From Octopus sinensis (taxonomy: Eukaryota): a stretch of 64,000 bases of DNA. Positions 7,528 to 56,775 of this stretch are shown piece after piece (positions within the stretch are counted from its first letter, which is position 1; every line of letters begins with the position of its first letter). A program made the translations under genes and the position numbers. Below the pieces are notes generated by a model. It saw only the letters and a list, made by a program, of their open reading frames with translations. It searched no databases and was not told where the DNA came from. The stretch is taken from positions 25,916,001 to 25,980,000 of the forward strand of contig NC_043013.1 in NCBI RefSeq assembly GCF_006345805.1, read 5' to 3'.

Positions 7528-9093
7528 CAGGGGGGGGGGTAAATATTCGTGCATGTCAAAATTCTTTATTTATTTAATTTCTAATGAACATAAATGGGAT
7601 ATACCAATACTATATTTGCATACACATGCATAAACTAAGAATATGCAAAAGAAACTAATAAATTATAGTAACCAAGGAATTTATATTCAATTATAAATAT
7701 TTAGGGGTGGAAAAAGTATTCGTACAGAGCATAAATAACTGATAGTTCTGATTTAATACTTCGTAGCATAACTATTATTCAGTTCCACTTCAACCAATCG
7801 CTTTTTGTAGTTCTTTATCAATGACTCACATGTTTCTTTAGGAATTTTTTCCCATTCTTGACAAATTTTCTTCAAATCTGCAATGCACGTTGGGGCTCTT
7901 GAATGAATTTTAATTTTCAAAAAGCGCCACAAATTTTCAATGGGGTTCAAGTCAGGCTTGGCCATTTTAATAATTTCATATTGTGATCGACAATCCATTT
8001 TTTGGTAGACTTCGCCGTGTGCTTAGGGTCGTTACCCTGTTGTAAAACCCACCCTTCACAAAGCTGGAGGTTTTTCTACAGAGTCCCATAAATTATTGTT
8101 CAAAATATTTTGGTACATCTTTTCATTCATTCTACCATTTATCACATGTAAATTGCCAGTACCATTTGCAGAGAAACACCCCTTCACCATGATGTTACCA
8201 ACTCCAAACTTTACGGTAGGAATTGTGTCTTTCCTCCAAACATGGCTACGCGAATTTCGTCCAAACAATTCAATTTTCGACTCGTCTGTCCATAGAACAT
8301 TTTCCCAGAGTGTATCAGATTTATCTTTATGTTCGTAAACAAATTTTAAACGGGCATCTCTATGCCTTTTAGTTAACAGCGGAGTTTTTCTAGGAGAGCG
8401 TGACTTCAGTTCATTCCTATGAAGTTCATTGTTGATTGTTCGTAGTGTAACACTAGTCCCTGAAGCTAACAAATCTCCTTTCTGGTGATCATTGCATTTT
8501 CTTCGATTCTTCGCTTCATTTTTCTTAAAGATCTAGGGGAATCTAGCGTGGTGCACCGGATCTTATTCTGTTCTCAACAGTTCCCGATTCTTTATATCTT
8601 TGAATAAATGAAGATATGGTAGAAAATGGAATACAAAGGGTCTCTGATATTTTCCTGTAACTTTTACCCGCTTTCCATTGTTCAATGATTAAATTTTCCA
8701 CTGAATTTGTGAGTTCTTTACTTTTTGCCATTATTACGATACTACTTTATGTTGTCTCAGTGCTGAATGAAGAAGCTAGTGTTTTGACACTTAAAAATGA
8801 CAACTGTTAAGATTATTGGAACAAACGAGAAAGTTCTATTAAAAAAAATTATTTCAACAGTATTTTGTGGCAGAGAAAATCATAAATTTATTCTGTACGA
8901 ATACTTTTTTCACCCCTAAATATTTATAATTGCATATAAATTCATTAGTTACTATAATTTATTAATTTTTGTATGTGCATATTCTTAGTTTATGCATGTG
9001 TATGCAAATATAGTATTGGTATATCCCATTTATGATCATTAGAAATTAAATAAATGAAGAATTTTGATATGTACGAATATTTATTTCCCCCCA

Positions 9094-9292: not shown

Positions 9293-11183
9293 TATTGGCA
9301 TCCTTTCTGTCTCAGGAGACAATGGAGTTGCGCATGAAGTAGTCTAGTCCGGCTTTTATATTTCATGTCCTGATACATTTCCTGCTGTGGCTGTGTAGTC
9401 CTATCCTGGACAAACACTCCCTCTGGCAGGTACCGCAAATGTAGTGAAGACTGTTCCTGGCTTGTTGTAGTGCCATAGTCTCTTGTTTACGTCTCTTCCT
9501 TTCTTTCCATTTCTCCTCTCTCTCTCTCTCTCTGTCACTCCTTTGTATTCCCTCTTTTACGGTACGTCGCCATTCTCCGCGGTTGCCGGCAACTGCCTCC
9601 CAACCGCTAATATTGATGTTGCAGGCCTTCATGTCCCTTTTGCAAACATCCTTGTAACGTAAGATCGGTCTACCCACAGACCTAGTACCCCTAGCAAGCT
9701 CTCCGTAGAGTATGTCCTTGGGGATTCTGCCATCTTTCATACGGCTAACATGCCCAAGCCATCTCATACGACTTTGTGTGAGGAGTGCAAACATGCTTGG
9801 TATTCCTGCTTGCCTGAGGACATCTTTGTTGGAGATATGATTCTGCCATTTGATGCGGAGGATTTTTCGGAGGCAGCGCAGGTGAAAGATGTTTAGGCGA
9901 CGCTCTTGGCGTGTGTATAGCGTCCAGGTCTCACTTCCATACAGTAGAGTGCTGAGTACACATGCCTGGTAGATCTTCATTTTCGTGGTCTTGGTCAGCT
10001 TATTGTTGTCCCAAGCCCGTTTGGAGAGTTGGGCCATCGCAGCAGCTGCCTTGCCAATGCGTATATTGAGCTCAGCGTCAAGGGATAGGTTGTAGGTGAC
10101 GGTAGAGCCCAGATAGGTAAACTCCACCTCTTGTAATCTGTGGTCTCCAATATGTATGTTTGGGATGTCCGATGTAGCCTGGCCCATGATGTTGGTCTTC
10201 TTAAGGCTGATAGCTAAGCCAAAGTCGTTACATGCTTGCTCAAAACAGTTAATGAGCCTTTGGAGGGCTTCTTCTGTGTGTGTTACCAGAGCGGCATCAT
10301 CAGCAAATAACATCTCCTTGATCAGGACGTTTCCCGTCACTTCTACTGTGCAGAAACACTCCATCATCTGATGTCTGAAAGGCATGTGAAAGTAAGAGCG
10401 AGAAGAAGATGCCAAACAATGTAGGAGCGAGGACACAACCTTGCTTTACCCCGTTTTTTATTTGGAAGGCGGCTGATGTTGAACCGTTGTGCTGTATGGT
10501 GCCTTGCATGTCATCATGGAAAGACTTGATGATCCTCAGCAGCTTTGGTGGACATCCGATTTTTTGGAGCAGGATGAAGAGGCCTGTTTTGCTTACCGAG
10601 TCAAAAGCCTTTGTTAGATCAATGAAGGCCATATATAATGGCATTCTGCTCTCTGGACTTCTCCTGAAGTTGGCGTATGGAGAATATCATATCGATAGTT
10701 GATCTGCTTCTTCTAAAGCCACACTGCGATTCCGGATAGATTCGAGAAGCAAGTAGTTGTAGCCTGGCCAGGATAACGCGGGCAAAGGTCTTTCCAACAG
10801 TGCTTAGAAGGGATATACCACGGTAATTGTTACAATCACCAGGGTCACCTTTGTTTTTGTAAAGCGTAATGATGTTAACATCCCGCATATCCTGAGGGAC
10901 TGTACCCTCTTCCCAGCACTGACACAGAAGCTCATGAAGGTGCCGAAGCAGGATGGTGTTTTTGCCGGCTTTGATGATCACTGACTTTTCCCGGAGCCTT
11001 ATTTCTTGCTAGGGAGTCAACAGCCTTGGTGAGCTCTGCTATAGATGGCGGACTGTCAAGTTCGCACATGATTGGCAAGATCTTGACACTCTCGACTGCA
11101 GCCTCAGCCACTGTGGTCTCCCGTGAGTAGAGATCCTGGTAGTGCTCCACCCATCTATCCATTTGCTTGCCTTGATCCCTGAT
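9293..11183 (-). mobile_element. 5'-truncated RTE-clade LINE (reverse transcriptase and C-terminus, frameshifted)
   Basis: ORF pieces NNYRGISLLSTVGK, SQCGFRRSRSTIDMIF, FIDLTKAFDSV, GVKQGCVLAP, LFADDAAL, LLYGSETW; 3' end ccattgtctcctgagacagaaaggatgcc. Confidence 0.93.
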
Positions 11184-11856
11184 ACATGCATTTATATATA
11201 ACTTTAAATATGTAAGATGGCTGAATGTGTATATCTGAGTATGATTGCATGTATATGGCTATATGTGTGCATGTAAGCATTTAAGGTTGGTTGTATGTAT
11301 GCACTTGTGTGATTGCATGCATATATATGAATGTCTGCGTGTATATATGTATATATGCGTGTATGTATTTCTTTTTGTATTTATATATGTACATATATAT
11401 GTATATGTATGTACGTATGTGTGAATTTATGTACGTGCGTATATATGTATGTGGATGTATATATGGATGTATCTGTGTATATTTATATATGTACGTACAT
11501 ATGTATGTATTTATGTATGTACCTATGTATATTTTCATGTATGTAGTTATATATGCATTAATGTATATATTTATGTACGTAAGTATATATGTATGTGTTT
11601 GTATGTTTGTATGTATACATGTATGTTTGTTCTGTTTGTGTATTTATGTATGCGTGTGTGTGCATGTGTGTCAGTTTTGTGTTTTGTGTTTATATATATT
11701 TTCCATTATTTATCTCCGTAAACAAAAATAACGGATTAAAGCTAAGTTATTAGGCCAACTGGTGTAATCTTTAAAGTCGAACAAGCAACAGTGATGATTA
11801 TAATGAGAAACCAATTATTTGGGGAGGCTTATGTAACATAACACAAAGCACCGCTT

Positions 11857-11887
<31 letters not shown>

Positions 11888-12132
11888 CAGCAACAACAAC
11901 AACTATCACCAACGACAATAGCAACAACGTCTGCAACGGCGGCAACAAACGTTAAGACAGACGACCATGATGAAAATTATCCTAATATAAACTATGTGTG
12001 TGTGCGCGAACACACACACATACACACACATATACGTACACACACATACGTACACACATATATGTATATATGTGTGTATGTATGTATGTATGCATGTATG
12101 TATGTATGTATGTTATTCTTTAAACAAAAATA

Positions 12133-12210
12133 TTATTGAAAGTGACTTTGATTTTGCGGCCAGTTAGGGCATCAGCGGACTGGCTGAAACTTCGAAGTCA
12201 CTGTCAATAA
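12133..12210 (+). ncRNA. Candidate microRNA precursor hairpin
   Basis: Bulge-free stem 12133-12165 pairing with 12178-12210 (33 positions: 26 Watson-Crick, 3 G-U, 4 mismatches), 12-nt loop, in non-repetitive sequence. Confidence 0.5.
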
Positions 12211-12315
12211 CATTCATATTTAAGTGTGATAAATTTGTACTCTATAAAAGTACAGAGTAATCCATCAGATTAATGTAAAATTGCTTTCATTATAACAACA
12301 TAAAAACAAGCACTA

Positions 12316-12355
<40 letters not shown>

Positions 12356-12398
12356 TTTCAGTTTTACATTCGTTATTCATTGTATTATTATTATTATT

Positions 12399-12954
12399 GA
12401 GTGAGAGAGCAGTTCATGCCATCAAAGTGACACTGGGGTAAAATATACGAAGCCCAATATACCCATCATGACTACCCGTCTGATAAAGGTACACCAGGCA
12501 CATGCATCACAACCATATGTGCGCGACATGGTGATCTCATATCAAGATAAACAGCACATGACCTTGCAGGTGGGGCCCAGTTAGAATTTTCTTCAGGTTG
12601 AGTAGCCCATCCCGCTCAAACGGTCCCTGAATAAGGGTTGCTTAAGGATGTTGAAAGAACCACCCATGTTTCCAGAGGTGAACTATTCAAACCCCAAAGA
12701 ATCCCTCTCAACACATGGCTATGATGCTCCCCCACTACTTCTGCTCGTGATCAGAGATGCACATATCGTCAGCCACTAAGGGACATGCTCAACTGGTTAA
12801 GGTCAAACAACTGACAAGCAAATCTGTGGTATTGAGCAGAATATTTGCTGTAGCCCATCTTTTATACCAAGACAAAACAATGTACATGATAACACTTCCA
12901 ATCAGTTAAGATCAGAAGCCATGAGAGCCACTGCCTGGTACTGCATCAGGGCAT
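12399..12954. mobile_element. ~556-bp non-coding interspersed repeat embedded in (TTA)n ('560 element'), intact copy
   Basis: Precise ends gagtgagagagcag... and ...actgcatcagggcat; homologous copies at 18196, 18815, 20851 and (reverse) 45852. Confidence 0.8.
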
Positions 12955-18127: not shown

Positions 18128-18195
<68 letters not shown>

Positions 18196-18749
18196 GAGTG
18201 AGAGAGCAATGCATGCCATCAAAGTGACACTGGGGTAAAATACACGAAGCCCAGTATACCCATCATGACTACCTGTCTGATAACGGTACACTAGGCACAT
18301 TCATCACAACCATATGTGCGCGACATGGTGATCTTATATCAAGATAAACAGCACATGAACTTGCAGGTGGGGCCCAGTTAGAATTTTCTTCTGGTCGAGT
18401 AGCCGATCCCGCTCAAAAGGTCCCTGAATAAGGGTTGTTTAAGGATGTTGAACGAACAACCCATGTTTCCGGGGGTGAATTATTCAAACCCCAAAGAATC
18501 CCTCTCAACACATAGCTATGATGCTCTCCCACTATTTCTGCTCGTGATCAGAGATGCACATATCGTCAGCCACTAAGGGACATGCTCAACTGGTTAAAGT
18601 CAAACAACTGACAAGCAAATATGTGGTATTGAGCAGAATATTTGCTGTAGCCCATCTTTTATACCAAGACAAAACAATGTACATGATGACACTTCCAGTC
18701 AGTGAAGATCAGAAGCCACGAGAGCCACTGCCTAGTACTGCATCAGGGC

Positions 18750-18750: not shown

Positions 18751-18815
<65 letters not shown>

Positions 18816-19272
18816 ATGAGAGAGTAGCACATGCCATCAAAGTGACGCTGGGGTACAAATATATGAAACCCAATATACCCATCATGACTACCTGTCTGAT
18901 AAGGGTACACCAAGCACATGCATGACAACCATATGTGTGTGACACGGTGACCTCATATCAAGATAAACATCACATGACCCAAATAGAATTGTCTTCAGGT
19001 CGAATAGCCCATCCCTCTCAATAGATCCCTGAACGAAGATTGTTTAAAGATGATGAATGTAATACTCATATTTCCAGCGGTGAACCATTCAAACTCCAAA
19101 GAATTCCTTTGAACCCATGAGGGTGATGTTCCTCCTGTACTCCTGTTCGTGATAAGAGATGCACATATCGTCAGCCACCAAGAGAGATGCTCAACTAGTC
19201 AAGAAGTTCATGCATGTGAAAAACAAATCTGCGGTATTGAGCGAAATATTCGCCGAAGCCCATCATTTGTAT

Positions 19273-20828: not shown

Positions 20829-20850
20829 TATTATCATTATTATTATTATT

Positions 20851-21264
20851 GAGTGAGAGAGCAGTGCATGTCATCAAAGTGACACTGGGGTAAAATATAC
20901 GAAGCCCATCATAACTACCCATCAGGTAAGGGTACACCAGGCACATGCATCACAACCATATGTGCACGACATGGTGATTTTATATCAAGATAAACAGCGC
21001 ATGACCTTGCAGGTGAGGCCCAGTTAGAATTTTCTTCTGGTCGAGTAGCTGATCCCGCTCAAAAGGTCCCCGAATAAAGGTTGTTTAATGATGTTGAACG
21101 GAACACCCATGTTTCCAGAGGTGAATTATCGAAACCTCTAAGAATTCCTATCAACACACGGCTATGATGCTCCCCCACTACCTCTGCTCGTGGACAATGA
21201 TGCACATATCGTCAGCCACTAAAGGGACATGGTCAACTGGTTAAGGTCAAACAACTGACAAGCA
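20851..21264. mobile_element. Truncated 560 element copy
   Basis: Starts gagtgagagagcag after (TTA)n; breaks after caactgacaagca. Confidence 0.75.
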
Positions 21265-39665: not shown

Positions 39666-40897
39666 CAGGGTGTCCCAAAAAAATGTATACACACTTTAGC
39701 AGCTGATAACTCAATTGATATTGTTTCTTTCCAGATGAAACCTATTGGATTTAATGATGGCAGTCAGATTAAGCTTTGAACAAAGAAAATTCATTCTAAA
39801 ATGATACTGGAAGTGTGAAAATGCAGTTGAAGTGCAAAAACAGTTGGGGAGGGAGTTTCAAACAGATCCACCAATGCAACTCCCTATCACTTGAATTAGA
39901 GGTAAGTTTGAAGCTGATGGAACTGTTCAGAATGTCCACGATAAGCATTCCAGAAGACCCCGAACATCAACAACCCCAACAAAGCAAGGAGTACTGGAAA
40001 TGAATCACCAAAGTCCAAGAAAATCTGTGCGGCAAAGCGAGTCATGAGGTAGGTATTCCAAAATCATCTGTCCAATGCATTTTGAAGCATTGTCAATGGA
40101 AAAGTTACATTCCAAGATTAGTCCATGCTATTAATGATGATGATCCAGACGAAAGAGTGCAGCATTGCGAGTGGTACTTGGAACGATGTGTAGAAGCTGC
40201 ACACTTTCCAACAAAGATTGTGTGGAGTGATGAAGCCACATTCAAATTAAATGGTTCAATTAACTTCCACAATTGCACCTACTGGGGTCCTGAGAATCTG
40301 CATGTTATGGTGAAACACCATGTTAATTTGATATTTGTGTGGTGTGGTTTATCATCAACAGGATTAATTGGACCATTCTTTTGTTATGCTACTGTGACTG
40401 GTCCCGTTTACTTGAACTTGTTGCAACAGTCTGTTATGCCAAGCATTAGAGAAGACTTTGAAGATGAGGAGTTTTATTTTCAGCAAGATGGGGCACCCCC
40501 ACACTACCATTGCTATGTTAGATCCTTCCTTGATGAGATCTTGCTAAACAGGTGGATTGGTTGAATTCACCAGACCTCACACCACTAGACTTTTTTATGG
40601 GGATACCTTAAAGACAAATTCTACGCTATGAAACATACAAGTCGCTGATTTGAGAGCAGTCATTGGACGAGAGTGCACACAAATACCAAACAAATTCTTT
40701 TGTGATATTTGTGATTCCATTCCTTTGCGTTGTCAGCAGTGCCTGGACCAGACCGGACATCAGTTTGAAAACAGGCATTGACAAAACAATAAAATAATGT
40801 CTGTAGATTCTATTAAATTTTGAAAATGAAGTGTCTTTTAATAAACAACTACTTTACAATTGTTTAAAGTGTGCATACATTTTTTTGGGACACTCTG
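39666..40897 (+). mobile_element. Near full-length mariner-like transposon (DD41D/rosa-type), inactive
   Basis: 33-bp TIRs cagggtgtcccaaaaaaatgtatacacacttta (2 mismatches), TA flanks; [20 protein letters not shown], then a deletion before SPDLTPLDF. Confidence 0.9.
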
Positions 40898-42609: not shown

Positions 42610-43350
42610 CCCCGAAAGGATGAAAGGCAAAGTCGACCTTGGCGTAATTTGAACTCAGAGTGTAAAGACAGACGAAATACCTATTTCTTTACTACCCACA
42701 AGGGGCTAAACACAGAGAGGACAAACAAAGACAGACAAACGGATTAATTCGATTACATCGACTCCAGTGCGTAACTGGTACTTATTTAATCGACCCCGAA
42801 ATGATGAAAGGCAAAATTGACTTCTGCGAAATTTGAACTCAGAACGTAGCGGCAGACGAAATAACGCTGAGCATTTCGCCCGGCGAGCTAACGATTCTGC
42901 TAGCTCACCGCCTTACCAATTATACATATTAAGCAGATTTAGTGGTTACTTGAGCGGCGATATGGAAGAAACGTTAGCACGCCGGGCGAAATGCGTAGCC
43001 GTATTTCGTCTGCCGTTACGTTCTGAGTTCAAATTCCGTCGAGGTCGACTTCGCCTTTCATCCTTTCGGAGTCGATAGATAAAGTACCAGTTACGCATTG
43101 GGGTCGATGTAATCGACTTAATCCGTTTGTCTGTCCTTGTTTGTCCTCTCTGTGTTTAGCCCCTTATGGGTAGTAAAGAAATAAGTATTTCGTCTGCCCC
43201 TACGTTTTGAGTTCAAATTCCGCCGAGGTCGACTTTGCCTTTCATCCTTTCGGGACTGATAAATTAAGTACTAGTTGCACACTGGGGTCTATCTAATCGA
43301 TTGGTCCCCACCGCAAAATTTTCGGGCCTTGTGTCTAGAGTAGAAAAGAT
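42610..43350. mobile_element. Two dimeric SINE B copies head-to-head
   Basis: Minus 42610-42914, ~40-bp spacer, plus 42953-43350. Confidence 0.85.
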
Positions 43351-45854: not shown

Positions 45855-47272
45855 CCCTGATGCAGTACCAGACAGTGGCTCTCATGGCTTCTGACCTTAA
45901 CTGATTGGAAGTGTTATCATGTACATTGCTTTGTCTTGGTATAAAAGATGGGCTACAGCAAATATTCTCCTCAATACCACAAATTTGCTTGTCAGTTGTT
46001 TGACCTTAACTAGTTGAACATGTCCATTAATAGTTGACGATACGTGTATCCCTGATCACTAGCAGAATTAGTGGGGGAGCATCATAACCATGCGTTGAGA
46101 GGAATTCTTTGGGGTTTGAATAATTGACCATGGGTGGCTCGTTCAGCATCCTTAAACAAACCTTATTCAGGGATCTTTTGAGCGGGTGAGCTAATCGATC
46201 TTAAGAAAATTCTAACTGGGCCCCACCTGCAAGGTCATGCGCTGTTTATCTTGATATGAAATCACTTTTCGTATTCTTTTCTTGAAACATTTTGACCTTG
46301 TGAGGCAGACATATCAATTAACAGACAAGTTCCTCTGTTGTAGTCCTTGATCACAATGTCTGGTCGATTAGAGTCAATTTTTTTGTCTGTTTGTATTGGT
46401 AAGTTCCAAAGAACGGTGACGCCCTCACCATTTGCTACATCCTCTGGATGGTGCCTGCATCACTTACCATGGGATTTAATTTTGTAGTATTTACAAGCAT
46501 TCCGGTGGATGTACTGCCCTAGTCAGTCATGTCTTATGAGATACTCTTTTTCAGAAAGGACTGAACAGCCAGAAACAACACAATCAATTGTCTGAATTTT
46601 TCATAAATTCTACACGAGGGACTCAGATTCATCCTTAAGGATGTTTGCATGGTAGTTTCTGCTAGGTAAGCTCTGATCTTGCGCTTCAATAACAAAACCT
46701 TCTGTTTCTCCTTTCAGACCTGTCCCTTGTAGCCATTGGTGTGTTAGATTGTGGACAAGTTGTAAGGGTATTTTCCATGCAGGAGTTTGCCTTTCCAGTT
46801 GTCTTCTATATTATTCATGTAAGCCTTCTTTACTTTTGTTTGATTTTTTTTCTTGCATTAGTGATAGGTTTGTCACTATTTGGATCTCGTTGGTCTTTCT
46901 GATTGTTAATTCCTAAATCAGGAGAAGCAATGCTAGGTCTGTCAGTACTTGGGTGTCTTTGGTCATTCTTATTGTTAACTTAAATTTCTTACTAAGCTTG
47001 CTTGGAATCTTCATGCTTCAGTGCCGTTCGTAAGAGCACATCACTTAGGATTGTTCGAGCTGTATCAGGCCTCTTCCACCTATTTTTCTAGAGAGATAAA
47101 TCCTGTCCACATCTGATTTTGAATGGTGCATTCGGTACCTTGTAAGGATTTTACGGATCTTTCCATCCATATTCTGCAAGTCAGAATATGGATGGGTAGT
47201 CATGATGGGTATACTGCGTTTCGTAAATTGTACCCCAGTGTCACTTTGATGGCATGCACTGCTCTCTCACTC
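45852..47272. mobile_element. Reverse-orientation 560 element with ~50 bp replaced by an R4/Dong ORF fragment
   Basis: 560 parts 45852-46265 and ~47191-47272; (TAA)n on both sides. Confidence 0.75.
46266..47180 (-). pseudogene. R4/Dong-clade ORF fragment (post-RT region, CCHC knuckle, RLE)
   Basis: LQNMDGKIRKILTRYRMHHSKSDVDRIYL..GGRGL, LHGKY, WLQGTGLKGETEGFVI.AQDQ, SCRI..IQTIDCVVSGCS, NRPDIVIKD..CLLIDMS, RKEYEK. Confidence 0.85.
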
Positions 47273-47279
47273 AATAATG

Positions 47280-47329
<50 letters not shown>

Positions 47330-48291: not shown

Positions 48292-49039
48292 TAGAAGACA
48301 CTTGCCCAAGGTGCCACACAGTGGGATTGAACCCGAAACCATGTGCCTGGTATGGTTCAATACTATATTAATTATTGTTGTTGTTGTTGTTGTTGTTGTT
48401 GTGCCTAAGCCAGTCTTATCTAGTAAGACCTTTGATAAAATGTATTCTAGTCAGGTCCGTCACATCTTTCTTTATATTTCAGAAACTACATTGAACGATG
48501 AGTCCTTCTTTATTTAAGGTTGTGTGGTTTGCTTTGAGAAAAGATTCAGCTGCTATTTCTAGCAGGACGAGCGACACTGAATAGGCTCTGTCGTTGCTTC
48601 ATGCTTATGAAAACAGAAAACGTCAAAATTACTTCGTTAGGGAAAACCTGTGAGGTTTATATTGCGGATTAGGTTCACGGCCATAGTATTAATGCAGGAG
48701 GTCAAGGCGGGCAACTGACAGAACCGTTAGGACACTGGACAGAATGTTTAGTTTCATTTCGTCAGTTCTTACGGTCTGGGTTCAAATTCCGCCGAGGTCG
48801 ACTTTGCCTTTCATTCATTCGGAGAACGATAAAATAAGTACCAGTTACGCACTGGGGGTTGATGTGATCGACTTAGCTCCTTCCCCCAAAATTACTGGCC
48901 CCAAGACAAAATTTGAAACCATTATGCAGGAAGTCAAATAAAGAACAAACATAATGTAAAAGTAGATGTGTCTTCGTTGCCTTCGACGATGATCATTCCA
49001 TTGTGTTATTGTTGATCATTCCATTGTGTTATTGTTGTG

Positions 49040-50160
49040 GCGAGAGTCACGACAACCCCGTGCGAGAATAGACTTGACCGAACGACTATAAATAGTAAGG
49101 GTCTGAGTGAGAGACAGAGAGAGTGTAGGCGTTAATTTTGTCGTGTGTCGGTGTTTTCTGTTCAGTTTGATCCCTGTTGGGCGTGAGTCGCATAGTTGAT
49201 TATTTGTTAAGAGTGTCCCCTCGTGGGTGTGCCTGCAATTGTTGATTATTTGTTGAGGGTGTCCCTTCGTGGGTGTGCCTGCAATTGTTGAAATTGCTGT
49301 TACTGCTGTTTGCATAAGATATTGTTGGGTTGTGTTTGTTTTCGTCCCATTTGTGGATGAGGTGGAACGGGTTCCAGCGGGAAGCCACAGTTGTGCAGCG
49401 GCGTCTGGCGGAGGAGTGGACTCTGAACCTTTGGAGGTTTGTGAAGTAAGGGTTGGGCCGAGGAGGCTAAGGGAGTGTGAAAAATTGTTAAGTGGGGAAG
49501 GCGGCACGTCGAAGTAGGTGCCGCTACAGGAAATAACAAGCAGTGTGACGGGGAGGGCGGTGATATTGGAAACGCTGAAGTTGTCAACCGGGAAAGTGGA
49601 GGTAGCAGCCGTTGAAGCCGTTGAGAGCTGCCTAGAGGAGATCAAGGGGCTCACCACGTTCATTGCACGAGGGGAAAGGTGTGATGTGGTAGAGGTGCGA
49701 TTCGCTACGGAGGACGGGGTGAGGGAGCACTCCACTGAAGCCGTAGGAGCGGAGGAGTGGGTGCTTTTGCCCTCATGCTGTGGCAGACGTGTTGCCGGGG
49801 TGAGAGTGGGCGGGGTGCTCCAAGAAATGAAGGAAACATGGCTGGTGGCGGCCGTAATGTTTAACATGGAGGAGGAGGCTAAGGTACTTGGGGGGACGAG
49901 AACCAAAGGGTTGAATTGATGGGGTGTGGCATGGAGATGGCCATACAGACGGGTTTTAATGATCTAAACAGGATTGCAGAGGAGGTGGTTCTGCCCGTGG
50001 ATGTGGGGCTGAGAGTGGTGGTGGGGGGTGGGCCTCCTATATGCTGCCTAGGTGGAGAGAAGGGTCATATGAAGGCAAGGTGCCCCCAGTGATGAAAAGA
50101 ACAACAGATGGAGCAGCCTGAGGAGCGGGAGAGTGTGGACCAGGTGGTGCACGACGATGT
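49040..50160 (+). mobile_element. 5' UTR and decayed ORF1 of a Tx1/L1-type LINE
   Basis: ORF 49518-49919, then in another frame LRVVVGGGPPICCLGGEKGHMKARCP (degenerate CCHC knuckle); short tandem repeats in the UTR. Confidence 0.6.
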
Positions 50161-55429: not shown

Positions 55430-55500
55430 AAACAAGCTAGAAGCAGAGCGTCAACACACAACACTCTGTTACGCTGAGTTGAGGTTAAAGCATTCGCGAA

Positions 55501-55714
55501 ATGGAAAGTAAAAATTTATCCACAGAATACGAGAATGGTGTCGAACAATCTCTACCATTGAATTCAACCACATCGTTGGCGACAAATGCGCCCGAAGAAA
55601 GTTCACGTGGAGCATGGGATAATAAAATACAGTACATGTTTATGGTGATCAGCTACGCCGTCGGATTAGGAAATGTATGGAGGTTTCCGTATTTGTGTCA
55701 GAAACATGGAGGAG
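55501..55714 (+). CDS. First coding exon of an SLC6 (sodium:neurotransmitter symporter) family transporter, most like the B0AT/SLC6A15-20 amino-acid transporter branch
   Basis: [37 protein letters not shown] (TM1 signature), ending at phase-1 donor G|GTTAGT at 55715; next exon not found in the window. Confidence 0.95.
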
Positions 55715-56775
55715 GTTAGTTGCTACCATCTCTCTTTCTTTCTATCTGTCTGTCTCTTACTCTCTTTCTTTCTTTCTCTCTCTCTCTTTCTCTTTCATTT
55801 CTCCCTTTCCCACTTTAGAAATGTATATTTTTTGTGAATGAATGAGTGAGTGAGTGAATGGAGTGTGTTGTAATGAATGTATGTGTGTGTGTTTACTATG
55901 TGCGTATGTTTCTTCAGCTTCTTGATGTAAATGTATTTAAGGCGCTTCTCTCGCTCTATCCGCGCGTTTAGCTTCGTGTATATTCTCAAATGTATTGTTT
56001 AGTTTAGGTTAAAAAGAGAAAAAAAAAAAAAGATCGACAGATTAGAGAAAGAAAAACAAAGTGAAAAAGAAAGCGAAGGTAAAAGAAAATTCGAAAAAGA
56101 CATTTATCTTCGGCGATAAATGTGCTTTGAGGAAGGTAAAATCGCGTGCTTGTGTTTTCATAAAATCTTCGAATGTTGTCTTCATTTTCACGCTTGGTAT
56201 GGCCCTGTTTACACTGTCGGCTTTGGGATCTCTCATTCATTTTCTTTCTTTCTTTCCCCCTTCTATTTCATTTGCTTAATATTTCCATTTTCGTTTTATA
56301 TTTTCGTGTTCTGTTATTTCCGAAATCATTCAATGACAACCGTTATATAAGAACAGAGAACCCCCCCTCCCCACTAAGTGTCAGACCCGCCTGCCCGGTT
56401 TTCGATTCTCTGTGTTGATTCCAAATTTAGAAATTTTCTTTTATCAGTGCCCTTGGGAAAGGCATGAAAGTCACAATTCCATTTTCTCTTCTACTACTTT
56501 AAATAAGAAATCAATATACCAGTATTTTTTTTTATTTGTTTATGTTTTTTTTTTTTACTTGTCAGCTTAAAGGTATGTAACCCGTAAAGGTGTAACGAAA
56601 GGCTTCTAGATAAAATGTCGGTGCGTCGTGAGGGCCAGCCTCTATGTTTCACCCTCCAGACTCAAAACAATCAAGAAACACGTCATTAACATGAAAATAT
56701 TAAGATTTAATTTGTTTTGACGCAATATCTCTCTTTCCGATCTCCATCATTTTGTTTGGAAAAACACTTTTCCTG

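What the first reader, a model, noticed from the sequence alone, without database searches (positions are those of the whole stretch)
12133..12210. Candidate microRNA gene with canonical Drosha geometry and a MIR-193-like seed
Seen: 33-position bulge-free stem (26 Watson-Crick, 3 G-U, 4 mismatches) and 12-nt loop in unique DNA. All three transition-type pairs are G-U on the plus strand, favouring plus as the transcribed strand. Applying the 13/11-nt Drosha rule from the stem base predicts 5p 12146-12167 (CUUUGAUUUUGCGGCCAGUUAG) and 3p 12178-12199 (GACUGGCUGAAACUUCGAAGUC) with 2-nt overhangs. The 3p seed ACUGGCU is one base from the MIR-193 seed ACUGGCC as I recall it, and the antisense arm begins AACUGGCCGCAAAAUC. 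Coleoid cephalopods are known for a large miRNA expansion. No basal UG or correctly placed CNNC motif was seen.
Basis: partly seen in the sequence, partly recalled or inferred. Interest (0 to 1): 0.75.

Follow-up and report, generated by a model that had tools for sequence, protein, structure and literature searches.

The report
Octopus MIR-193-type hairpin, opposite strand
The hairpin is real and looks like a microRNA precursor, but its match to the ancient MIR-193 family is on the minus strand, so it is probably an ordinary, perhaps already catalogued, Octopus bimaculoides MIR-193 locus rather than a new plus-strand gene.

Summary
Positions 12133-12210 form a 33-position stem (26 Watson-Crick, 3 G-U, 4 mismatches) with a 12-nt loop. 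It is single-copy and the strongest non-repetitive hairpin in 85.7 kb of Octopus bimaculoides DNA.

The palindrome spans 12120-12223. Over that length the G-U/A-C asymmetry is 3:3 and both strands fold equally well, so the argument for the plus strand fails.

The MIR-193 link is real but lies on the minus strand. The minus-strand 3p arm, AACUGGCCGCAAAAUCAAAGUC, carries the exact seed at positions 2-8 in the register set by the geometric rule. It matches lophotrochozoan miR-193 (UACUGGCCUGCAAAAUCCCAAC) at 15 of 16 aligned positions, the other being a 1-nt deletion. P is about 1e-4, and it ranks first of 85 mollusc miRNAs.

Points against: Rfam's mir-193 model scores 16.4 bits (threshold 55). 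The 3' end lacks UCCCA. The minus-strand duplex pairs only 14 of 20 positions. No reads or orthologues could be reached.

Best reading (0.58): a MIR-193-family locus transcribed from the minus strand. It is possibly the Mir-193-P1 gene published for octopus, otherwise a diverged paralogue or relic. Interest is low.

The parts
12133..12210 (.). Core hairpin: 33-position stem plus 12-nt loop
   Evidence: 26 WC, 3 G-U and 4 mismatches. MFE -37.9 (+) and -27.7 (-) kcal/mol, both far below shuffles.
12120..12223 (.). Full inverted repeat: 46 positions per arm, with TTAAA/TTTAA at the tips. Complementarity is random beyond it.
   Evidence: 35 WC, 3 G-U and 8 mismatches. MFE -38.6 (+) and -38.2 (-). 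Transition-type mismatches split 3:3 between the strands.
12144..12165 (-). Predicted mature 3p arm AACUGGCCGCAAAAUCAAAGUC, homologous to MIR-193 (seed ACUGGCC at nt 2-8)
   Evidence: The register comes from the 13/11 rule applied to the minus strand. It matches lgi-miR-193 in ACUGGCC and GCAAAAUC with a 1-nt deletion: score 13, P = 2.2e-4 and 6.7e-5, 0 of 1636 genomic tiles. It ranks first of 85 mollusc miRNAs.
12176..12197 (-). Predicted 5p (star) arm CUUCGAAGUUUCAGCCAGUCCG
   Evidence: Derived from the same register with 2-nt offsets. The duplex overlap pairs 14 of 20 positions, with 6 mismatches including three A.C.
12166..12177 (.). Terminal loop, 12 nt unpaired (10 nt between the predicted arms)
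   Evidence: No UGU or GUG motif on either strand.
12146..12167 (+). It is the complement of the MIR-193-like arm, and its seed UUUGAUU equals the MIR-315 seed.
   Evidence: The seed identity comes from the Ovu-Mir-315 8-mer AATCAAAA and bgl-miR-315. The full-length similarity is not significant (P = 0.18), and Rfam mir-315 gives no match.
12178..12199 (+).
   Evidence: It scores only 8 against lgi-miR-193. Its target 8-mer AGCCAGTA is absent from the held Ovu seed and target tables.

Best explanation
The hairpin is a MIR-193-family microRNA locus of Octopus bimaculoides whose sense strand is the minus strand. A minus-strand primary transcript would fold into the 33-35-bp stem. Drosha would cut about 11-13 nt above the base of the core, and Dicer would cut next to the 10-12-nt loop. 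That releases a duplex whose 3p arm, AACUGGCCGCAAAAUCAAAGUC, begins with A opposite a C, so its 5' end is unstable and it should be the strand loaded into Argonaute. With seed ACUGGCC it would repress mRNAs carrying GGCCAGU(A) sites, the site type listed for Ovu-Mir-193-P1. Shown here: the hairpin, its uniqueness, the species, and a statistically supported homology of the minus-strand 3p arm to mollusc miR-193 in the family's usual arm and register. Inferred: transcription, Drosha/Dicer processing, Argonaute loading and function. Not decided: whether this is the Mir-193-P1 gene already published for octopus (my guess, about half) or a diverged second copy.
For: Hairpin quality and uniqueness. 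Species: the SLC6 exon at 55501-55716 is 100% identical to O. bimaculoides A0A0L8HH25, and SINE families are shared with O. bimaculoides locus L001. MIR-193 (Mir-193-P1, seed ACUGGCC) is reported for O. vulgaris, with the same 138 families in O. bimaculoides (PMC9699675). Published mollusc miR-193-3p sequences: UACUGGCCUGCAAAAUCCCAAC (PMC8044141 and PMC3972184) and uacuggccuucaaaaucccaa (PMC7328434). The minus-strand arm aligns ACUGGCC-GCAAAAUC with score 13. P = 2.2e-4 against dinucleotide shuffles and 6.7e-5 against column-permuted hairpins, and 0 of 1636 genomic tiles reach it. It is the top hit among 85 mollusc miRNAs; the other 83 have mean 6.5, sd 1.1 and max 10. The 13/11 geometric rule on the minus strand places the seed exactly at nt 2-8 of the 3p arm, the family's mature arm. 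At the four duplex mismatches that fall inside the aligned block, the minus 3p arm keeps the family-consensus base. Rfam mir-193 gives a weak match on the minus strand only.
Against: The Rfam mir-193 model scores 16.4 bits against a gathering score of 55 and aligns only the basal stem. Nothing in the window reaches any Rfam gathering score. The arm has a 1-nt deletion inside the mature sequence and lacks the UCCCA motif that the mollusc sequences share with the fly and human sequences as I recall them. That would make it an unusually divergent member. On the minus strand the predicted duplex pairs only 14 of 20 positions, below the 16 or more paired nucleotides of the MirGeneDB criteria, and all three transition-type mismatches in the duplex are A.C on this strand. 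No UG, UGU or CNNC motifs were found. The minus-strand stem continues for about 13 more weak pairs below the expected basal junction. No small-RNA reads, no orthologous locus and no MirGeneDB sequence could be consulted.
Confidence: 0.58

Rival explanations
1. A decayed MIR-193 paralogue or relic. The hairpin descends from a MIR-193 gene but is no longer expressed or processed, and the canonical gene lies elsewhere in the genome.
For: The same homology evidence applies. In addition there are signs of decay: a 1-nt deletion in the mature arm, loss of UCCCA, only 14 of 20 duplex pairs on the sense strand, A.C rather than G.U mismatches, and an Rfam score far below threshold. The locus sits between microsatellites, a LINE fragment and a SINE.
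Against: The seed and the next 8 nt are intact. All four informative mismatches preserve the mature arm (about 1/16 under neutrality). The hairpin is still the best in 85.7 kb.
Confidence: 0.16
2. An orphan inverted repeat, such as a foldback or MITE-type relic or a template-switch palindrome, whose resemblance to miR-193 is coincidental. It has no RNA function, or at most is an incidental double-stranded RNA or ADAR substrate.
For: Both strands of the full palindrome fold equally well and the transition mismatches split 3:3, as expected for a DNA-level palindrome. TTAA(A) lies at both tips. No processing motifs are present. Rfam miRNA models for unrelated families (mir-942, mir-192, mir-3913) score as high or higher simply because it is a hairpin. 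One such hairpin per roughly 86 kb would scale to tens of thousands per genome against 162 annotated miRNA genes (the extrapolation is my inference).
Against: The miR-193 similarity is about 1e-4 even against structure-preserving nulls, and it sits in the correct arm and register. No second copy was found in 85.7 kb, in JGI metagenomes or in prokaryotic genomes. The terminal repeats of the Tc1-like and mariner elements in the window are unrelated.
Confidence: 0.13
3. One reading: a plus-strand, lineage-specific miRNA giving 5p CUUUGAUUUUGCGGCCAGUUAG and 3p GACUGGCUGAAACUUCGAAGUC.
For: The plus-strand core is 10 kcal/mol more stable, and the duplex pairs 17 of 20 positions including 3 G-U. The 5p seed equals the MIR-315 seed in register.
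Against: The strand bias disappears over the full palindrome. Both plus arms start with C or G, which from my own knowledge are poor Argonaute 5' nucleotides. No Ovu miRNA in the held tables has the seed ACUGGCU or any other register-specific seed except Mir-315's own. The similarity to miR-315 beyond the seed is not significant. The family-like arm is the other strand's.
Confidence: 0.1

Closest known systems
MIR-193 family (lgi-miR-193 and bgl-miR-193-3p; Ovu/Obi-Mir-193-P1 of MirGeneDB as reported in PMC9699675)
   Same: The mature arm is the 3p arm. The seed ACUGGCC sits at nt 2-8. Nucleotides 2-8 and the following GCAAAAUC block are identical to the lophotrochozoan consensus. It is a hairpin of canonical size with a 10-12-nt loop.
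   Different: A instead of U at nt 1. One nucleotide (U9) is missing. The 3' end is AAAGUC instead of CCAAC, so there is no UCCCA. The sense-strand duplex is looser (14 of 20 paired). The Rfam model scores 16.4 against a threshold of 55. The stem continues about 13 weak pairs below the expected basal junction.
MIR-315 family (bgl-miR-315-5p UUUUGAUUGUUGCUCAGAAAGCC; Ovu-Mir-315)
   Same: The plus-strand 5p arm in the geometric register has the same seed UUUGAUU, in the family's usual (5p) arm.
   Different: Similarity beyond the seed is not significant (score 9, P = 0.18), and Rfam mir-315 gives no match. Four of the seven seed bases (GAUU) are simply the complement of miR-193's conserved AAUC, so this is best read as a by-product.
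Foldback or MITE-type short inverted repeats
   Same: A 104-bp near-palindrome in AT-rich, repeat-dense DNA, with TTAA at both tips and both strands folding equally.
   Different: It is single-copy in all the sequence available. It has no relation to the terminal repeats of transposons in the window. One arm carries a specific 15-nt match to a conserved miRNA.

Membership tests
Bona fide animal microRNA gene (MirGeneDB criteria as listed in PMC12539619) | Imperfect hairpin precursor with at least 16 paired nucleotides in the stem | tested here: met
   The core stem has 29 of 33 positions paired on the plus strand and 26 of 33 on the minus strand. Counting only the predicted 20-nt duplex overlap gives 17 (+) but only 14 (-), so the criterion is borderline for the strand I favour.
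Bona fide animal microRNA gene (MirGeneDB criteria as listed in PMC12539619) | Small-RNA reads from both arms | not testable with these tools
   No small-RNA data are reachable. The arm sequences do not appear in any searchable paper text.
Bona fide animal microRNA gene (MirGeneDB criteria as listed in PMC12539619) | 5' homogeneity of the reads and 2-nt Drosha/Dicer offsets | not testable with these tools
   This requires read mapping. Only a geometric prediction is available.
Bona fide animal microRNA gene (extra criterion of PMC9699675) | Presence of the locus in a second octopus species | not testable with these tools
   No orthologous DNA could be fetched. The LINE handle led to a paralogous locus. 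The SLC6 exon handle lies 43 kb away and returned only short contigs. Exact look-ups of ORFs near the hairpin found nothing. Pattern scans found nothing.
MIR-193 | Seed ACUGGCC at nt 2-8 of the 3p arm | tested here: met
   Met on the minus strand in the 13/11-rule register. Not met on the plus strand, where the seed is ACUGGCU.
MIR-193 | Similarity of the mature arm beyond the seed to family members | tested here: inconclusive
   The GCAAAAUC block is identical to lgi-miR-193 after a 1-nt deletion (score 13, P about 1e-4, first of 85). The last six nucleotides differ and UCCCA is absent.
MIR-193 | Precursor scores at or above the Rfam mir-193 gathering score | tested here: not met
   16.4 bits against 55, on the minus strand only, with only the basal stem aligned. 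No match at gathering thresholds anywhere in the window.
MIR-315 | Mature 5p arm similar to UUUUGAUUGUUGCUCAGAAAGC(C), and a match to the family model | tested here: not met
   Only the seed matches. Alignment score 9, P = 0.18. No Rfam mir-315 match even at E up to 10.
MITE or foldback transposon relic | Multiple dispersed copies, target-site duplication, and terminal repeats related to an autonomous element | tested here: inconclusive
   No other copy in the 64-kb window or in L001. TTAA lies at both tips but is itself part of the palindrome. The terminal repeats of the Tc1-like and mariner elements are unrelated. Genome-wide copy number could not be measured.

The most novel reading that the evidence does not exclude
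The locus is not the catalogued gene but an unannotated, unusually divergent MIR-193 paralogue, with an indel inside the mature arm and a rewritten 3' half. It is transcribed from both strands, so the minus strand yields a MIR-193-seed guide and the more stable plus-strand hairpin yields a MIR-315-seed guide from the same DNA arm. From my own knowledge, this would resemble the sense/antisense pair mir-iab-4/iab-8 in flies.
Probability: 0.05. Interest if true: 0.55.

Novelty: already known. Interest (0 to 1): 0.25.

Why it matters
If this is the MIR-193 gene already published for octopus, the finding is ordinary. It would only confirm that stem geometry plus a family seed can locate a conserved miRNA from raw sequence. 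It would also show that inferring the strand from G-U pairs can point the wrong way. If it is a second copy, it would be a rare case of a deeply conserved miRNA family tolerating a deletion inside the mature sequence and a new 3' half. That would be of modest interest for how the cephalopod miRNA repertoire grew. In either case it is not evidence for a new family.

Tried and rejected
1. Rfam at gathering thresholds over the whole window found nothing. At permissive thresholds the region 12000-12115 gives mir-3149, mir-1277 and mir-297 "hits" that are microsatellite artefacts. On the hairpin itself, mir-942, mir-192 and mir-3913 score 23-29 bits on both strands. I reject these as generic hairpin scores.

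2. MIR-315 membership was rejected.

3. I considered the A-to-G edit at "position 1" of Ovu-Mir-193-P1_3p as evidence that octopus miR-193 starts with A. I rejected it because the table is 0-based, as checked with miR-71.

4. Reaching an orthologue through the neighbouring LINE failed. The best O. bimaculoides hit is a paralogue with no synteny.

5. The SLC6 exon identified the species but is too far from the hairpin.

6. Exact look-ups of three small ORFs beside the hairpin found nothing.

7. Two metagenome scans and one prokaryote-genome scan for the stem found nothing.

8. Text searches for the arm sequences, with and without "cephalopod", gave no relevant hit.

9. Sixteen register-specific target 8-mers were checked in the truncated octopus seed and target tables. 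Only Mir-315's own seed matched.

10. A relation to the Tc1-like or mariner terminal repeats, or to the adjacent SINE, was rejected.

11. A clustered mir-365/MIR-193-P2-type partner hairpin was not found.

12. I ran no further search on a 24-residue conceptual peptide from the hairpin. A negative result would have told us nothing.

Full report
**The observation.** The sequence at 12133-12210 is as described. Pairing position i with 24343-i gives 26 Watson-Crick pairs, 3 G-U pairs and 4 mismatches over 33 positions, around the 12-nt loop AGGGCATCAGCG. The plus strand folds at -37.9 kcal/mol (z = -7.3 against 200 dinucleotide shuffles) and the minus strand at -27.7 (z = -5.9). Neither arm recurs in the window at up to 3 mismatches, and a sensitive blastn finds only the self inverted match. 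I folded 80-nt windows every 10 nt on both strands across the whole window and across an independent 21.7-kb O. bimaculoides locus. Everything at or below -30 kcal/mol is microsatellite, SINE copies or G+C-rich sequence. The candidate is the only non-repetitive single hairpin with an MFE index above 0.85 (1.12; the next best is 0.82). So the feature is real and locally exceptional.

**Anatomy beyond the reported coordinates.** Complementarity continues to 12120-12223, giving 46 positions per arm (35 Watson-Crick, 3 G-U, 8 mismatches) with TTAAA/TTTAA at the tips. Beyond that it is random. This affects the strand call. The three transition-type mismatches in the core are G.U on the plus strand. 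The three in the basal extension are A.C on the plus strand, which makes them G.U on the minus strand. The total is 3:3, and the 104-nt segment folds equally well on both strands (-38.6 versus -38.2 kcal/mol). The predicted seeds also depend on the cleavage register. Eight plausible plus-strand registers give eight different seeds per arm, and none has a basal UG, an apical UGU or a CNNC motif.

**Source and context.** The window is repeat-rich animal DNA.
- A LINE reverse-transcriptase fragment lies at 9295-11183(-). Its best relative is O. bimaculoides LOC106872601 (76% amino-acid and 83% nucleotide identity). That locus is a paralogue with no synteny, but it shares SINE families with the window.
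- An open frame at 55489-55716(+) matches the start of the Pfam SNF (SLC6) domain (E = 6.6e-14). From its ATG at 55501 it is 100% identical to UniProt A0A0L8HH25, "Transporter", of Octopus bimaculoides. The species is therefore O. bimaculoides.
- The hairpin lies about 43 kb upstream of that start codon, in a roughly 270-bp unique island. On one side is a (CA)n/(GTAT)n microsatellite. On the other are an (AT)n tract and a SINE starting at about 12383.

**Known families, first pass.** No Rfam family reaches its gathering score anywhere in the window. On the hairpin alone, with the laxest filters, the matches are mir-942 (28.9 bits; threshold 100), mir-192 (25.6; 54) and mir-3913 (23; 100), each on both strands. 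mir-193 scores 16.4 (threshold 55) on the minus strand only, with just the basal stem aligned. mir-315 does not appear. These scores mostly reward hairpin shape, and none supports membership.

Zolotarov et al. 2022 (PMC9699675) annotated 164 miRNA genes in O. vulgaris and 162 in O. bimaculoides, in the same 138 families. They required small-RNA reads and presence in both species. Their held tables list Ovu-Mir-193-P1 with target 8-mer GGCCAGTA and Ovu-Mir-315 with AATCAAAA. None of the other register-specific 8-mers for this hairpin belongs to an annotated Ovu miRNA, but the files are truncated.

**The MIR-193 lead, tested properly.** Published mollusc miR-193-3p sequences are uacuggccuucaaaaucccaa (Biomphalaria glabrata, PMC7328434) and UACUGGCCUGCAAAAUCCCAAC (lgi-miR-193 as printed in PMC8044141, and the same 22-mer in PMC3972184). 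The minus-strand 3p arm of the hairpin is the reverse complement of 12144-12165, AACUGGCCGCAAAAUCAAAGUC. It aligns to the lophotrochozoan sequence as ACUGGCC-GCAAAAUC: 15 identical bases interrupted by one deleted base.
- With a simple local alignment (+1/-1/-2) the score is 13.
- It is reached by 13 of 60,000 dinucleotide shuffles (P = 2.2e-4).
- It is reached by 4 of 60,000 hairpins made by permuting the stem columns (P = 6.7e-5). That null keeps the structure and composition.
- It is reached by 0 of 1,636 real 104-nt tiles from the window and L001.
- The plus-strand arm scores 8.
- As a multiple-testing control I scored 85 mollusc mature miRNAs against the hairpin. lgi-miR-193 (13) and bgl-miR-193 (11) rank first and second. 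The other 83 have mean 6.5, sd 1.1 and max 10.

It places the family seed exactly at nucleotides 2-8 of the 3p arm, which is the arm that yields the mature miR-193. At the four duplex mismatches inside the aligned block, the minus 3p arm carries the family-consensus base. The first nucleotide is an A opposite a C. By the usual asymmetry rule (my own knowledge) that favours loading of this arm.

**What argues against a well-behaved MIR-193 gene.**
- The Rfam score is far below threshold.
- The mature arm has an internal 1-nt deletion, and its last six bases differ from the mollusc consensus. It loses UCCCA, which the mollusc sequences share with the fly and human sequences as I recall them.
- On the minus strand the predicted duplex pairs only 14 of 20 overlapping positions. 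The published criteria ask for at least 16 paired nucleotides (PMC12539619). Three of those mismatches are A.C.
- The minus-strand stem continues for about 13 weak pairs below the expected basal junction.
- There are no processing motifs and no neighbouring partner hairpin.

The three criteria that define a miRNA experimentally are reads from both arms, 5' homogeneity and 2-nt offsets. None of them, and not conservation in a second species either, could be tested with the tools available.

**The MIR-315 coincidence.** In the same register the plus-strand 5p arm has the MIR-315 seed UUUGAUU. The rest of the arm is not significantly similar to miR-315 (P = 0.18). Four of the seven seed bases (GAUU) are the complement of miR-193's conserved AAUC, so only three further bases need to agree, about 1 chance in 64. 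I treat it as a by-product of the MIR-193 homology.

**Verdict.** The hairpin is real. My estimates are:
- **0.58** that this is a MIR-193-family locus read from the minus strand. About half of that weight is on it being the Mir-193-P1 gene already published for octopus.
- **0.16** that it is a decayed MIR-193 copy.
- **0.13** that it is an unrelated inverted repeat with a chance resemblance.

A look-up in MirGeneDB and a mapping of the existing small-RNA libraries would settle the matter.

Noticed in passing
window 42611-43254: A large inverted repeat with two 301-nt arms, 87% complementary, 42 nt apart. The arms look like SINE-type copies placed head to head. If transcribed it would form long double-stranded RNA, a plausible ADAR substrate.
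   Followed up: no
window 55501-55716 (+): First coding exon of an SLC6 sodium:neurotransmitter symporter gene (Pfam SNF, E = 6.6e-14). It is 100% identical to O. bimaculoides UniProt A0A0L8HH25, a 112-residue fragment model. This identifies the species.
   Followed up: yes
window 9295-11183 (-): A 5'-truncated LINE reverse-transcriptase fragment split over three frames. It is 83% identical in DNA to a paralogous copy annotated as LOC106872601 on O. bimaculoides CM046604.1.
   Followed up: yes
window about 7705-8920 (-) and about 39667-40893 (+): A Tc1-like element and a mariner-like element. Both have recognisable terminal inverted repeats and interrupted transposase frames. Their ends are unrelated to the hairpin.
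   Followed up: partly
window 49000-50100: A G+C-rich block (up to 56%) with long open frames on both strands, including a 315-codon Ser/Thr/Pro-rich frame. It has no Pfam match, and its CpG ratio is no higher than the window average. It lies 5.5 kb upstream of the SLC6 start codon and could be a 5' exon or promoter region.
   Followed up: partly
window 12383-12510, 18180-18307, 18798-18926, 20836-20953, 47191-47288: Five copies (87-94% identical) of one SINE-like element. The first starts 160 nt from the palindrome, and similarity does not extend into it.
   Followed up: partly
window 11200-12115: (GTAT)n and (CA)n microsatellites give sub-threshold Rfam matches to mir-3149, mir-1277, mir-297 and others on both strands. 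They are artefacts of low-complexity palindromic sequence, not miRNA genes.
   Followed up: yes
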